This document shows positions 3,614 to 58,101 of a DNA stretch of 64,000 nt, one piece after another (within the stretch, counting starts at the first letter, position 1; the number at the start of each line of letters is the position of its first letter). The position numbers and the translations under genes are program-made. The notes beneath the pieces are model-generated. The model made no database searches and had not been told where the DNA came from. It saw nothing but the letters and a program-made list of their open reading frames with translations. The stretch is from Zootoca vivipara (lineage: Eukaryota): positions 23,498,001-23,562,000 of the forward strand of contig NC_083282.1 of assembly GCF_963506605.1 (NCBI RefSeq). Reading direction: 5' to 3'.

Positions 3614-4139
3614 CATGGGCGTACCCAGGGGGGGCAGCTGCCCCCCCGAAGCTAAAAAAAGAAAGAAAGACAGCTTGCGGCATACACTTTTGTCCTTCTC
3701 GGTTGGGTACACGATCTTGCCACAGCGGGCACAGCGTAAGACCCCAGCGGAAGGCAGCGGTGGGAGTTGCCCCCGGCTGCCTGGAAAAGGCTGGAAAGCT
3801 GCGTCTGTGGCAAGGCTCGTAACACTGCAGAAGCAAGCGGGAGGAGGAAGAGGGAGAGGGCGTGAGGGAAAGAGAGCGCTCACACCAGCACGCACACCAG
3901 CACACACCAGCCTACAATCGGCGCGCACTGTTTTTTTCCAGGGTAAAAAGAGCAGAGGCCGGCGGGGAGGAGTTGCGGAGAACCGCATGACCGCCCCCTC
4001 CCCTCTGGGGGGCGTGGACATTGACCACGCCTCCTGGGAGGATCCCGGTCACGTCATCGCCAGCCAGCCAATCGGGTGGCTGGGGGTGGGGTGTGTGGCT
4101 TGCCTGCCCCCCCTAGTTTTGATCCTGGGTACGCCCATG
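3614..4139. mobile_element. Non-autonomous hAT element with captured GC-rich host sequence (Pack-hAT candidate)
   Basis: Perfect 16-bp TIR CATGGGCGTACCCAGG / CCTGGGTACGCCCATG; perfect 8-bp TSD GCTGTGAA (3606-3613, 4140-4147); CpG-rich interior; no transposase. Confidence 0.92.
3695..3733 (-). pseudogene. LASP1: Captured fragment of LASP1 first coding exon (LIM domain start, [13 protein letters not shown]) inside hAT element
   Basis: 13 consecutive codons match the recalled LASP1 N-terminus [23 protein letters not shown] (NEBL/LASP2 has V instead of I); no ATG and no remainder of the LIM domain. Confidence 0.85.
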
Positions 4140-40807: not shown

Positions 40808-40957
40808 CAGTATGGAAGACTATCGCTTCTGAATATTCTTGTTAAACTTTCAAAATCTTCATTTTTGAAGTGTAATTCTTCAAGCAAAGTAGCCAGGAAC
40901 TGCGAATATCCTTGGCTGTGCTGGGAACTTGCAAAGATGGGAATATTTTGCGACAAC
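40808..40957 (-). CDS. Candidate internal coding exon of an unidentified host gene
   Basis: Acceptor TTGTGTTTCAG, donor TG|GTAAGC, 150 nt, phase 2-2, only one frame open: [49 protein letters not shown](W); no repeat similarity seen. Confidence 0.6.
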
Positions 40958-55409: not shown

Positions 55410-55660
55410 TTGTGTACACTTGGAAACGTTGGCAGCATGAAGATAAATTCAACAGTGTAAATAAGTTTTGATGGAGTGATAATTGGGGGGGGGGAGGAAA
55501 ACTGGATAGTTTAGTTTATATAAAATATGCAGGGATTTATGCTATGCAAAATGAACCATGGAAAGTGAAGAAGGGAAGTCACTGATATTTTAAGGTTGCT
55601 TAAATGAATTTTCTGAATTGTAAAACAGAAAATTTAATAAAAATTATATATACCATAAAA
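55410..55660 (+). mobile_element. L1-like 3' UTR/tail
   Basis: AT-rich, GGGAAGTC motif as at 5927, AATAAA and A-rich end. Confidence 0.55.
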
Positions 55661-55847
55661 AAGACTGGACTTTAGCTGCTATAAAACAGAGCAGCTAAAG
55701 TTTTGCCCAGAGCCAGTGTTTGAAATCTGCAAATGAGCTCCACTGGCTGTCGCTCCATTTCCAGGCTCAATTTAAAGTGCTAGTCATTACCTATAAACAC
55801 ACCTCTACAGTTCAGGACTCAGGATCGTAGGAAGATACCTTCTACTG

Positions 55848-56408
55848 CAGTGTTTCTCAACCTTTTTTGGGCCACGGCACACTTTTCTATGAAAAAAAAT
55901 CCCGCGGCACACCAACTCTGTGCCGCCCTATATTTAGTTTAGTTTGGAGGGGAGACGTACCGGTAAAGCATGCCGCTGAAGAACTGCTGCGCGGTAGCCA
56001 GGCGGACCCACCAGGCGCAGAGCCTGCGGAGCGAGCGGGGACAGACCCCAGGCGGGCAGACACGGGCGCGCAGCTGCCGCCGCCTCCCTCCCAGCCGCCC
56101 CAGGCAGCCGCCGCCGCTCTGGCCCGGCGAAGGGAAGCCCTGCGCAGCCTTCCCCGCCTGCCTCCTCCTCCCCAGGAGGGCGATTTGCATTGTCACGTGC
56201 CTGGCGGCCGCCAATAAACAGCGCTGACCCGCCAGAAAGGAAGCCGGTCGGGTCACGACGCGGGCACTCGCCTCGCGTCATGACCCGGCCGGCTTCCTTT
56301 CCGGCGGGTCAGCGACGTGACAGTGCAAATCGCCCTTCTCGTCGCGGCACACCAGCCAGTGTTTCGCGGCACAGTAGTGTGCCGCGGAACACCGGTTGAG
56401 AAACGCTG
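55848..56408. mobile_element. Non-autonomous hAT (Charlie/Buster-type) element with captured CpG-rich sequence (Pack-hAT candidate)
   Basis: TIR CAGTGTTTCTCAACC / GGTTGAGAAACGCTG; perfect TSD TTCTACTG (55840-55847, 56409-56416); subterminal CGCGGCACAC repeats; CpG-island-like interior. Confidence 0.93.
55961..56023 (-). other. Exon-like cargo with both splice sites inside hAT element
   Basis: Acceptor TCTGTCCCCGCTCGCTCCGCAG, 63 nt, donor CG|GTACGT; frame LCAWWVRLATAQQFFSGMLY(R) has G/C at 18 of 20 third positions. Confidence 0.6.
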
Positions 56409-56459
56409 TTCTACTGAGTCAGATCGTTGGCCACCTCATTCCTGACTGTCTACGCTGAC

Positions 56460-56550
56460 CATAGCTGCCAAGTTCTCCCTTTTTTTAAAGGGAAATTCCC
56501 TTATGCTGAATAGGCTTCCTCGCGAGAAAAGGGAAAACTTGGCAGCTATG
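56460..56550. mobile_element. 91-bp hAT MITE
   Basis: TIR CATAGCTGCCAAGTT; perfect TSD ACGCTGAC; inverted near-copy of 5289-5378. Confidence 0.95.
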
Positions 56551-58039
56551 ACGCTGACTGAAAGCAGCTCTGCAGTATTTTAGACAGCAAGTCTTTTCCA
56601 GACTCACCTGGAGATGCCAGGGATCGAACCTGCAGCCTTCTGCAGACAAAGAAACGGAATTAAAGGTCTATCTCCTCCCACACTGTCCAAGCTACACCTG
56701 GCCATTTCTCCTGCAAGGGAAAGGCAACCCTTTTGTGTCTGTCAGCTGCTAGCTATCACAGATAACAAATGCAAAGAGCTTACTTCAAAGATGTCGTATC
56801 AATGGAGCAATATAATAAAATCCTTTCATCAATAGACAGCCAGGGGGGTGGGGGTGGTATATTTATACAGAAGAACTTCCTTATAGTGTTAAGGGTATGG
56901 AGAATCAGCACAGCGAGGTAACAATCTGCACAAGGCACATAAAGAACTAGGGGTGGAGGAGAAATTTGGATCGGTCTGTATTTTAACGCAATTTGCCCTT
57001 CCCAAAACAACACATGAACCAAACTGCAGCTATCTTTTGCAACGCACACTTCTCCAGCTTGTGTGATCCAACCAAACAATGTCCATATTAGCAAAAACAA
57101 GCACACAAAATTCATTATATTAGGAGAAATTGTTTGCTAACCTGCTCACAAGCTAGGAATTGCCAACATGAGAAGTTATGAGTGTTTATTAGAAATACGA
57201 TTATATTACTCACGTTTTGAAGAGAAGGCAATCTTTCTATTAAGTGAATGTGGTGGCAGGTATAAATCATTACCTGTGCAGGTAACAACTGAAACTGAAC
57301 GGCGTCAAATGTGGGGCAGAGGACAGTGTCTCAGATCGGACAGTCCCAAATTCAAAACCTTGTTCAGCCACTGAAGCTCACTGGTGACCTTAAGCAGCCT
57401 TCCCCAACCTGGTGCCCCCCCCCCAGAAGTTTTGGGACATCACTCCCATCAGTCCCACCCAGTTTTGCCACTGGTCAATGATGGTGGGAGTTTCACATTG
57501 CCACCTGCAAGACGCCAAAGCCAGGGAAATCTAAGTTATTCATTGTGGCAGAAGCAATATGTTATGGGATGTGTTGGAGCCAGGAAACCACCTTGGGTAC
57601 TCAAAGGCGGGATATATATTTAAATAAGAAAAGAAAGTTCAACCTAGGCTACTTTGCAGGGCTTTTGTGAAGACACAAAAGGGAGGGATGGGAACAGAGA
57701 AAAACCTGTTTCTTGGGTCTTAGGAACCATGGTGCAAAATTAATTTTGAACAAGTTTCCAAAATATATAGCAGATATGAAAGACAGCAGATTTTTTTTTA
57801 AAAAAACACAGACTCATAAATCTCTAGAATGCATAAAAAATAAAAATGCAATGTAGTCTTCACGGTTTCATCACAAAGAAGCCATGCACCACTTTATAGT
57901 ACAGTACTTTATAAAATGCTTATGGAAAAACTTAGGGAAATACGGATTCAGATGCAAAGGGAGCAGCAGATGGAAGAATGCCAGAATAATCCACTTAGGT
58001 AAACATATCATCAATACAAGACTCTATGAATTTACTCAC

Positions 58040-58101
58040 CTGCACCAAGTTACTATGGAAACTACAACCATAAAACTGATCATACCTTCGTTTTAAACTT
58101 T
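58040..58101 (-). CDS. Candidate exon of the unidentified minus-strand gene (SLKRRYDQFYGCSFHSNLVQ)
   Basis: Acceptor TTATTGTTTTAG, consensus donor CAG|GTGAGT, 62 nt, open frame phase 1-0; could be non-coding. Confidence 0.4.
58049..58062. promoter_or_regulatory. RFX X-box-like motif GTTACTATGGAAAC
   Basis: Close match to the GTTNCCATGGNAAC palindromic consensus. Confidence 0.35.

What the first reader, a model, noticed from the sequence alone, without database searches (positions are those of the whole stretch)
55848..56408. Second hAT family carrying an intact 63-nt exon with both splice sites
Seen: a different TIR family (CAGTGTTTCTCAACC) with a perfect TSD contains, on the minus strand, a polypyrimidine acceptor, 63 nt with no stop in any frame, and donor CG|GTACGT. 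One frame (LCAWWVRLATAQQFFSGMLYR) has strongly coding-like third-position GC. Inference: DNA-level capture of a host exon with its intron flanks, giving a frame-preserving portable cassette. It lies on the same strand as, and between, the candidate host exons at 58040 and 40957, so exonisation is possible. The donor gene was not recognised.
Basis: partly seen in the sequence, partly recalled or inferred. Interest (0 to 1): 0.85.

Follow-up and report, generated by a model that had tools for sequence, protein, structure and literature searches.

The report
Lizard hAT transposon with exon-like cargo
A 561-base cut-and-paste (hAT, SPIN-like) transposon in a lizard RPAP2 gene carries about 240 bases of CpG-rich DNA that most likely is the end of some gene's first exon plus its splice donor, not a complete portable internal exon, and this kind of gene-fragment capture is already known and was found many times in this same genome.

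Summary
The sequence features are real. There is a 561-bp non-autonomous hAT at 55848-56408 with 14/15 TIRs and a perfect 8-bp TSD (TTCTACTG). On the minus strand it holds a stop-free 63-nt stretch between ...ctccgcag| and |GTACGT.

The reading as an intact internal exon with both splice sites is not supported.
- Acceptor-like sites are common in this 73-81% GC core: 3.2 per shuffle.
- 29% of 63-mers of this composition have no stop in any frame.
- In one RNA run, reads of a single orientation cover the core without a break across the proposed acceptor (56154 to about 55965). They fall off at the donor.
- No junction was listed at 56023 or 55961.

My best reading is a SPIN-like Pack-hAT. It carries the 3' part of a first exon (mostly 5'UTR; the only ATG lies 11 nt before the donor), the donor, and about 25 nt of intron. 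Beside the cargo lies an inverted duplication of the element's own right arm.

Summed contig depth suggests about 10^4 copies of the termini and 10^2-10^3 copy-equivalents of the core.

The donor gene was not found. No exonisation into RPAP2 was seen. The proposed host exon at 58040 is unsupported.

The scan has already reported the same kind of element many times on other DNA of this genome.

The parts
55840..55847 (.). Left target-site duplication TTCTACTG
   Evidence: Read directly. Identical to 56409-56416.
55848..55862 (+). Left terminal inverted repeat CAGTGTTTCTCAACC (the 16-mer CAGTGTTTCTCAACCT fits the SPIN_NA1_AC consensus CAGTGKTTCTCAACCT)
   Evidence: (pair I5). Consensus taken from PMC3014272.
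55848..55935 (+). Left arm of the element: TIR plus subterminal region, with GCGGCACA motifs at 55904 and 55919 forming a small hairpin
   Evidence: Highest summed depth, 94k-593k in X5 against about 55 for single-copy DNA. All 5 GCGGCACA sites in the 64-kb window lie in the two arms; 0.8 are expected by chance.
55936..56173 (-). CpG-rich core (73% GC, CpG o/e 0.77), the probable cargo. Read on the minus strand it is GC-rich 5'UTR-like sequence, then ATG, then the donor, then about 25 nt of intron-like AT-richer DNA.
   Evidence: Composition step. Summed depth only 6.5k-54k against 500k-780k for the termini. RNA of one orientation in X22. No other copy in the window.
55961..56023 (-). I read it as the last 63 nt of a longer first exon.
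   Evidence: X22 coverage is continuous across 56023 and ends near 55961-55969.
55955..55960 (-). Splice-donor-like GTACGT after ...TTTACCG (7 of 9 matches to MAG|GTRAGT)
   Evidence: X22 depth falls from 2.35 to 0.46 in the bin holding this site. Some other copies carry 2-nt or 6-nt deletions here (table 4).
55971..55973 (-). The only ATG in the minus-strand core, 11 nt before the donor (ATG CTT TAC CG|gt). A possible start codon.
   Evidence: Read directly. That it is a start codon is inference only.
56174..56262 (+). P1: an inverted copy of the inner part of the right arm. It contains ATTTGCAT, CACGTG and CCAAT motifs.
   Evidence: Inverted repeats I1 (41 nt, 93%) and I2 (30 nt, 87%). DNA fold z = -11.3. 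Summed depth 563k, so this is family sequence and not cargo.
56274..56339 (+). P2: the inner part of the right arm and the partner of P1 in a ~166-nt hairpin
   Evidence: Depth 210k-285k. The opposite-strand joint 56177/56340 shows that reads from canonical copies fit P1 better than P2.
56340..56408 (+). Right arm: subterminal GCGGCACA motifs (56344, 56366, 56378) and the right TIR at 56394-56408
   Evidence: Depth 514k-777k.
56409..56416 (.). Right target-site duplication TTCTACTG
40808..40957 (-). Host exon: the C-terminal coding exon of RPAP2, on the same strand as the cargo's donor
   Evidence: phmmer against PDB: RPAP2 residues 566-611 of 612, E = 6e-9. Splice sites read.

Best explanation
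This is a young, non-autonomous SPIN-like hAT transposon of the Pack-TIR / Pack-hAT kind.

Its own parts are a left arm (55848-55935) and a right arm (56267-56408). The cargo lies between them, next to an inverted duplication of the right arm's inner part (P1, 56174-56262).

The cargo (55936-56173) is CpG-rich DNA. On the minus strand it reads as the 3' part of a gene's first exon. That exon is at least 210 nt of 5'UTR-like sequence, with its only ATG 11 nt before the end. It is followed by the gene's splice donor and about 25 nt of intron 1.

The 63-nt 'exon' is the tail of that first exon. The 'acceptor' at 56023 is a chance YAG in C-rich DNA.

Shown:
- the hAT hallmarks;
- the multicopy status of both arms;
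- the much lower abundance of the core;
- the host gene, RPAP2;
- single-orientation RNA coverage that crosses 56023 and stops at the donor in one run.

Inferred:
- The core was copied from a host gene during repair of an excision gap or by replicative template switching. The neighbouring fold-back duplication fits this.
- The loaded element then transposed repeatedly.
- The X22 reads come from the parent gene or from sister copies.

At this locus the element is most likely an inert intronic passenger.
For: - TIR and TSD.
- The terminal motif CAGTG fits the hAT YARNG rule. The 16-mer fits SPIN_NA1_AC CAGTGKTTCTCAACCT from PMC3014272.
- Subterminal GCGGCACA repeats occur only in the two arms.
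- Depth in X5 (single-copy about 55): arms 5-8 x 10^5; core 6.5 x 10^3 (56044-56154) to 5 x 10^4 (55933-55969).
- A contig of another run spans the core/P1 junction with only 3 differences (55976-56205). So the loaded element exists in more than one copy (table 8).
- Composition jumps from 47% GC in the left arm to 73-81% in the core.
- CpG o/e is 0.77-1.3 inside the element against 0.36-0.41 in the flanks, so the insertion is young.
- X22 depth by bin from 56154 down to 55970 is 3.0, 4.7, 4.2, 3.2, 2.4, all with the first mate on +. It is 0.46 in the bin that holds the donor, and 0 on unique flanks.
- Donor-like sites are rare by chance, 0.33 per shuffle over both strands.
- Pack-TIRs in animals are mostly hAT and are enriched for exonic sources (PMC8277862).
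- Leads only, not evidence: the scan's notes report many other hAT elements in this genome carrying first exons plus donors.
Against: - No parent locus or donor gene was found, so capture from a host gene is not demonstrated.
- The right arm and the P1/P2 hairpin are themselves GC- and CpG-rich. High GC is therefore not foreign to this family.
- Core depth falls in steps away from the left arm (54k, 21-28k, 6.5k). Nested deletion derivatives of a longer element's own sequence could give the same pattern.
- Summed contig depth is a poor copy-number measure.
- The RNA evidence is only about 5 reads in one run. Its strand convention was not calibrated, and the exact read ends were not listed.
- A consistent 3-base GC periodicity runs along the whole core (p about 0.014). 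A pure 5'UTR does not explain it, although GGC/GCC-type triplets could.
Confidence: 0.55

Rival explanations
1. The core is not host-derived. It is either the family's own internal sequence, left over from a longer and perhaps autonomous SPIN-like element, or a patchwork of CpG-rich filler laid down during repair. On this view the donor, the acceptor and the ATG are all chance motifs.
For: - The arms, P1 and P2 are also 64-65% GC with CpG o/e of 1.2-1.3.
- Core depth declines stepwise away from the left arm.
- No protein, Pfam, PDB, Atlas or Rfam match exists for any frame tested.
- 10.5% of shuffles give some acceptor-donor cassette.
Against: - There is a sharp composition step at about 55936.
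- Single-orientation RNA coverage is confined to the core and stops at the donor in X22, while unique flanks have none.
- In RNA the core is 2-11 times over-represented against the termini, compared with the DNA run (ratios computed).
- Donor-like sites of this quality are uncommon by chance.
Confidence: 0.3
2. One reading: a complete internal 63-nt coding exon with both native splice sites was captured, giving a frame-preserving cassette that can be exonised into RPAP2 and into other host genes.
For: - The segment is 63 nt (3 x 21) and open in all frames. GC3 is 0.90 in one frame, with the canonical order GC3 > GC1 > GC2.
- There is a pyrimidine-rich tract plus CAG at 56024-56045 and a good donor.
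- Only 1.3% of shuffles give a cassette that is a multiple of 3 and open in all frames.
- It has the same orientation as RPAP2. In the phase that the 40957 exon requires, the cassette would read LCAWW...MLYR without a stop.
Against: - RNA coverage in X22 crosses 56023 at undiminished depth.
- The same GC periodicity continues about 150-180 nt upstream of 56023. The supposed exon is therefore not set apart from its supposed intron.
- The upstream 'intron' is 79% GC and open in all three minus-strand frames.
- No junctions were listed at either site in the two RNA runs.
- No protein homologue was found.
- The 58040 exon is unsupported and phase-incompatible.
Confidence: 0.07
3. The captured fragment is coding on the plus strand. 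It starts at ATG 55970 and reads MPLKNCCAVARR..., a frame with GC3 of 0.86. The minus-strand splice signals are then irrelevant.
For: - An 85-aa ATG-initiated ORF at 55970-56227 shares the GC-rich third position.
- X22 coverage begins at about 55965-55970, next to that ATG.
Against: - GC2 exceeds GC1 in this frame in the 63-nt stretch, which is not the canonical order.
- The ORF runs on into P1, which is transposon sequence, before it stops.
- The exact ORF is not in the protein collection. This frame was not searched for homologues.
- The peptide is arginine-rich, as out-of-frame GC-rich DNA tends to be.
Confidence: 0.05

Closest known systems
Pack-TIR / Pack-hAT elements of animals (Tan et al. 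2021, Nat Commun, PMC8277862)
   Same: A non-autonomous TIR transposon with a TSD whose interior is a short (median 224 bp) piece of foreign, often exonic or 5'UTR, DNA. hAT is the commonest carrier (208 of 370). One multicopy frog example carries a 291-bp 5'UTR fragment.
   Different: No parental locus was identified here, so the defining parent-copy pair is missing. The apparent copy number (10^2-10^3 copy-equivalents by summed contig depth) is far above what that survey found: only 4 multicopy cases in 100 genomes. The cargo sits beside an inverted duplication of the element's own arm.
SPIN / SPIN_NA hAT (Charlie-like) elements of the lizard Anolis carolinensis (Novick et al. 2011, PMC3014272)
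   Same: Terminal 16-mer CAGTGTTTCTCAACCT fits the SPIN_NA1_AC consensus CAGTGKTTCTCAACCT. It has an 8-bp TSD and is a high-copy non-autonomous derivative (SPIN_NA11_AC has 12,138 copies in Anolis).
   Different: Only the terminal 16 nt were compared, since no SPIN consensus was available. The TSD TTCTACTG fits NYYTARRN at 6 of 8 positions. The host is a different lizard lineage (lacertid, according to the scan's notes).
Pack-MULEs of plants
   Same: Cut-and-paste elements that pick up GC-rich 5' gene fragments, amplify them, and can be transcribed as chimeras.
   Different: A different superfamily (Mutator, 9-bp TSD) in plants. Pack-MULE parents are usually identifiable.
Other Pack-hAT elements reported by this scan in the same genome (for example s1-854796 OSBPL10, s1-853917 BRI3BP, s1-856573 PAPPA2, s1-856571 LASP1 in this window)
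   Same: The same architecture: a short hAT with CpG-rich cargo that ends in a first-exon piece plus a splice donor, often in tens to hundreds of copies.
   Different: Those cargoes were assigned to genes through protein similarity. Here the coding part, if any, is at most 4 codons, and no gene could be assigned. Those reports are unchecked AI notes. I inspected only the LASP1 element's ends.

Membership tests
hAT superfamily (non-autonomous member) | 8-bp target-site duplication | tested here: met
   TTCTACTG at 55840-55847 and at 56409-56416, identical.
hAT superfamily (non-autonomous member) | Short TIRs beginning with the YARNG motif | tested here: met
   CAGTG on the left and CAGCG on the right. 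15-nt TIRs, 14/15 complementary. The YARNG rule is quoted from PMC3014272.
hAT superfamily (non-autonomous member) | Multicopy, mobile family (independent insertions elsewhere) | tested here: met
   Summed depth of both arms is 5-8 x 10^5 against about 55 for single-copy DNA in X5. Hundreds of contigs run on into unlike flanks. Individual insertions with their own TSDs were not retrieved.
hAT superfamily (non-autonomous member) | Related autonomous element with a hAT transposase | not testable with these tools
   No lizard genome collection could be searched. The element itself encodes no Pfam-recognisable protein.
SPIN group of hAT-Charlie | Terminal consensus CAGYGGTTCTCAACCT / CAGTGKTTCTCAACCT | tested here: met
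   The left end CAGTGTTTCTCAACCT matches with K = T. The right end is CAGCGTTTCTCAACCG.
SPIN group of hAT-Charlie | Similarity beyond the TIR to a SPIN consensus or transposase | not tested
Pack-TIR (gene-fragment-carrying TIR transposon) | Internal sequence unrelated to the TE family consensus | tested here: inconclusive
   The core is 10-100 times less abundant than the arms and differs in composition. No family consensus was available, and core depth falls in steps.
Pack-TIR (gene-fragment-carrying TIR transposon) | An identifiable parental (TIR-less) locus in the host genome | not testable with these tools
   No eukaryote DNA collection was available. Protein routes gave nothing.
Cassette (internal) exon | The 3' splice site (acceptor) is used | tested here: not met
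   No joint was listed at 56023. X22 reads cross it at undiminished depth. This is a weak test: about 6% of each of two runs was read, and only the best-supported rows are shown.
Cassette (internal) exon | The 5' splice site (donor) is used | tested here: inconclusive
   X22 coverage ends within 55961-55969 (depth table). No joint or loose end at 55961 is among the rows shown. Reads in X21 from a diverged copy run through the site.
Cassette (internal) exon | Homology to an annotated exon or protein | tested here: not met
   The frame -1 peptide has no true hit among 1.84 x 10^9 representatives or in the word-indexed search. A 21-aa match alone would have been near the detection limit.

The most novel reading that the evidence does not exclude
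The element may act as a mobile 'promoter plus first exon' module. The family's own hairpin region (P1/P2) carries octamer, E-box, CCAAT and ETS-like motifs and is present in about 10^4 copies. It would drive minus-sense transcription through the captured exon. The captured donor would then splice to downstream host exons wherever a loaded copy lands in sense orientation in an intron. Here that would be the terminal RPAP2 exon. Hundreds of copies could then seed alternative 5' ends across the genome.
Probability: 0.08. Interest if true: 0.65.

Novelty: new member of a known kind. Interest (0 to 1): 0.3.

Why it matters
On its own this is one more probable gene-fragment-carrying hAT element, and its source gene is unknown.

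Its value is as part of a pattern. A survey of 100 animal genomes found only four multicopy Pack-TIRs (PMC8277862). This lizard genome appears to hold many different hAT elements loaded with first-exon and donor fragments, at tens to hundreds of copies. If that pattern holds, it would be a vertebrate counterpart of plant Pack-MULE activity. It would also be a natural system for asking why 5' CpG-island fragments are captured preferentially, and whether mobile splice donors rewire host transcripts.

The specific claim of a portable, frame-preserving cassette exon would have been more striking, but the evidence is against it.

Tried and rejected
**Donor gene by protein search**
- The frame -1 core peptide (70 aa) against 1.84 x 10^9 representatives gave only a spurious hit to a tandem-repeat protein.
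- The search for homologous proteins gave nothing with the 105-aa frame -1 ORF or with the 115-aa frame -0 ORF. That tool sees only proteins of 0.55-1.75 times the query length, so longer parents were invisible.
- Exact look-up of four ORFs: none is in the collection.
- PDB phmmer of frames -0 and +0 gave noise or nothing.
- Pfam gave nothing. The ESM Atlas gave no usable hit, and its recognition score was low.
- The third homology search was not spent on frame +1 because the odds were low.

**Other copies**
- There are none in the window.
- No eukaryote genome collection was available.
- Logan contigs of this multicopy element are only 84-230 nt long.

**Known RNA family**
- Only sub-threshold miRNA-hairpin matches, all on the P1/P2 palindrome.
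- No tandem repeats.

**Host exon at 58040**
- No RPAP2 similarity.
- Stops in two frames, and a phase mismatch with the 40957 exon.
- A motif search for the RPAP2 exon upstream of the 40957 one found nothing. It used short motifs recalled from memory, so it is weak.

**Empty-site allele**
- No joint 55847/56417 was listed in DNA run X5.

**Scan notes**
- Nothing was on record for this place, this peptide or this TIR.

**Literature**
- No paper in the library describes Pack-hATs in lacertid lizards.

**Relatives' runs**

Full report
**Observation**

- The left end at 55848-55862 reads CAGTGTTTCTCAACC. The right end at 56394-56408 is its complement with one mismatch (CAGCG for CAGTG).
- Both ends are flanked by the identical octamer TTCTACTG, at 55840-55847 and 56409-56416.
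- The 15-mer is found nowhere else in the 64-kb window apart from one 2-mismatch site. Chance expects 0.18 matches.
- On the minus strand the text reads ...gtctgtccccgctcgctccgcag | GCTCTGCG...GGCATGCTTTACCG | gtacgtctcccc.
- The 63 nt between the two bars have no stop in any frame.

**Anatomy**

The element has five blocks.
1. Left arm, 55848-55935. It is 47% GC and carries GCGGCACA motifs that form a small hairpin.
2. Core, 55936-56173. It is 73% GC overall and up to 81% locally.
3. P1, 56174-56262.
4. P2, 56274-56339, after an 11-nt loop. P2 is the reverse complement of P1: 41 nt at 93% and 30 nt at 87%. The DNA fold has z = -11.3.
5. Right arm, 56340-56408. It has three more GCGGCACA motifs and the TIR.

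All five GCGGCACA sites of the window lie in the two arms, where 0.8 would be expected by chance. This is typical of hAT subterminal binding repeats.

CpG o/e is 0.77-1.3 throughout the element against 0.36-0.41 in the flanks. The insertion is therefore young or unmethylated.

**Family**

CAGTG fits the hAT YARNG rule, and the TSD is 8 bp. The terminal 16-mer CAGTGTTTCTCAACCT fits the consensus printed for Anolis SPIN_NA1_AC (CAGTGKTTCTCAACCT). It is close to SPIN_AC (CAGYGGTTCTCAACCT) in PMC3014272. I therefore call it SPIN-like. I compared only the termini.

**What reads say**

*DNA contig run X5.* Single-copy contigs have depth of about 55. One example is the 2815-nt contig over 56529-56700 with no differences.

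| Region | Coordinates | Summed depth |
|---|---|---|
| Left arm, outer | 55859-55895 | 593k |
| Left arm, inner | 55896-55932 | 94k |
| Core | 55933-55969 | 54k |
| Core | 55970-56043 | 21-28k |
| Core | 56044-56154 | 6.5-7k |
| P1 | 56192-56228 | 563k |
| P2 | 56266-56339 | 210-285k |
| Right arm | 56340-56413 | 514-777k |
| Unique flanks | – | 11-420 |

- Summed contig depth is a crude measure. Even so, the arms and the P region belong to a family of the order of 10^4 copies.
- The core is 10-100 times rarer, yet it is clearly not single-copy.
- A 230-nt contig of another run (X13) spans 55976-56205 with three differences, crossing the core/P1 junction. At least one sister copy of the loaded element therefore exists.
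- The opposite-strand joint 56177/56340 shows that in canonical copies the P sequence abuts the right arm. P1 is therefore an inverted duplication of the element's own right arm, placed next to the core. It is not part of the cargo or of a host promoter.

*RNA run X22* (raw reads, about 6% of the run read).
- The core is covered only by pairs whose first mate lies on +.
- Depths in the bins from 56154 down to 55970 are 3.0, 4.7, 4.2, 3.2 and 2.4.
- Depth is 0.46 in the bin 55933-55969. That is what about 2 reads ending at 55961 would give.
- Unique flanks have depth 0.
- At the three sites where the X13 copy differs, these reads carry the window's letters.
- The transcript behind them runs through the proposed acceptor (56023) and stops at the donor.

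*RNA run X21.* The reads over 55896-56043 come from a diverged copy. They have at least 7 differences, and 8 of 12 carry a 6-nt deletion at 55957. They run through the donor region. No joint at 56023 or 55961 is listed in either RNA run.

Limits of this evidence: only the best-supported rows are shown, the read count is small, and the strand convention of the library was not calibrated.

**Chance**

Tests used dinucleotide shuffles of the core.
- Acceptor-like sites (YAG after at least 10/15 pyrimidines): 3.2 per sequence.
- Donor-like sites (at least 7/9 matches to MAG|GTRAGT): 0.33 per sequence.
- Some acceptor-donor cassette appears in 10.5% of shuffles.
- A cassette that is a multiple of 3 and open in all frames appears in 1.3%.
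- 29% of 63-mers have no stop in any frame.

The real core has a second acceptor-like site, near 56118, and a second donor-like site, near 56011. The donor is therefore the informative signal. The acceptor and the open frames are not.

**Coding potential**

One codon phase has 85-90% GC all along 55961-56203, not only in the 63 nt. In 5000 shuffles, 70 reached the observed contrast. In frame -1 the order is the canonical GC3 > GC1 > GC2.

No search supported frame -1 as a real protein.
- No true homologue among 1.84 x 10^9 representatives.
- None among proteins of 58-184 aa in the 90% clusters.
- No Pfam or Atlas signal.
- Frame -0 likewise gave nothing.

The minus-strand core holds one ATG, 11 nt before the donor. 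A first exon made of 5'UTR plus ATG CTT TAC CG is therefore the simplest genic reading. The periodicity remains unexplained; GGC/GCC-type triplets may contribute.

**Host context**

- The exon at 40957-40808 (minus) translates to [49 protein letters not shown]. It matches human RPAP2 residues 566-611 of 612 with E = 6e-9.
- The element lies 15 kb upstream on the same strand. The first ~565 residues of RPAP2 must be encoded further upstream still, so the element is presumably intronic. This is an inference, because I did not find the upstream exons.
- That exon ends in phase 0, whereas the 40957 exon needs two bases from its upstream partner. The pair cannot be neighbouring coding exons, and a 63-nt insert would not repair the frame.

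**Mechanism (inferred)**

A SPIN-like MITE acquired foreign CpG-island DNA. This happened either during repair of an excision gap or by replicative template switching, the models discussed for animal Pack-TIRs in PMC8277862. The fold-back duplication of the right arm directly beside the core is what a strand-switching repair event would leave. The loaded element kept both arms and was then mobilised in trans many times. Later internal deletions would explain why the part near the left arm is commoner than the rest of the core. At this locus I see no sign of function.

**Comparison and novelty**

This is a probable Pack-hAT. It is a known kind, but I cannot complete the membership test because the parental locus is missing. 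The scan's own notes are AI notes, and I treat them as leads. They list many hAT elements in this same genome with first-exon-plus-donor cargo, including OSBPL10, BRI3BP, PAPPA2, EPB41L4B, UNC13B, MCAT and DNAH10. One more lies in this window at 3614-4139 (LASP1). I read the ends of the LASP1 element and confirm that it belongs to a different TIR family. The present case adds another cargo and another example of multicopy status. It does not add a new principle.

**Verdict**

Transposon: yes. Cargo with a donor: probably. An intact internal exon with both splice sites and exonisation into RPAP2: not supported.
- Interest is low to moderate.

Noticed in passing
window 56460-56550 (TSDs at 56452-56459 and 56551-56558): A 91-bp near-perfect palindromic MITE with TIR CATAGCTGCCAAGTT... 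and an 8-bp TSD ACGCTGAC, so it is hAT-like. It lies only 43 bp from the SPIN-like element. Its summed depth in DNA run X5 reaches 8 x 10^6 against about 55 for single-copy DNA, which suggests of the order of 10^5 copies. It is heavily represented in both RNA runs on both strands.
   Followed up: partly
window 56174-56339: The family's own P region, present in about 10^4 copies, forms a ~166-nt hairpin here. It is dense in promoter-type motifs (ATTTGCAT octamer, CACGTG E-box, CCAAT, GGAAG/CCGGAAG-like). It may be the family's internal promoter or a source of hairpin small RNAs. Rfam gives only sub-threshold miRNA-precursor matches.
   Followed up: partly
window 3614-4139: A second, unrelated hAT element (TIR CATGGGCGTACCCAGG, TSD GCTGTGAA) with a CpG-rich interior. 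An earlier scan report, s1-856571, says it carries a LASP1 exon-1 scrap. I only read its ends.
   Followed up: partly
window 55700-55847 and 56417-56640: Both hAT insertions sit inside what looks like an older, CpG-depleted interspersed repeat. Related motifs occur on both sides, for example TTTCCAGGCTCA at 55758 and TTTCCAGACTCA at 56595. One single-copy-depth X5 contig joins 55779 to 56460, skipping 680 bases. The cause was not resolved; it could be a paralogous copy or an allele.
   Followed up: no
window 55600-55673: An AT-rich repeat with high summed depth (39k-127k in X5) and strand-biased RNA coverage in X22 (61 against 14). It was not identified.
   Followed up: no
window 55961-56203, minus strand: A consistent three-base periodicity in GC content, with one phase at 85-90%, extends over the whole core and about 30 nt into P1 (p about 0.014). 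No protein homologue exists in any frame tested. This is unexplained.
   Followed up: partly
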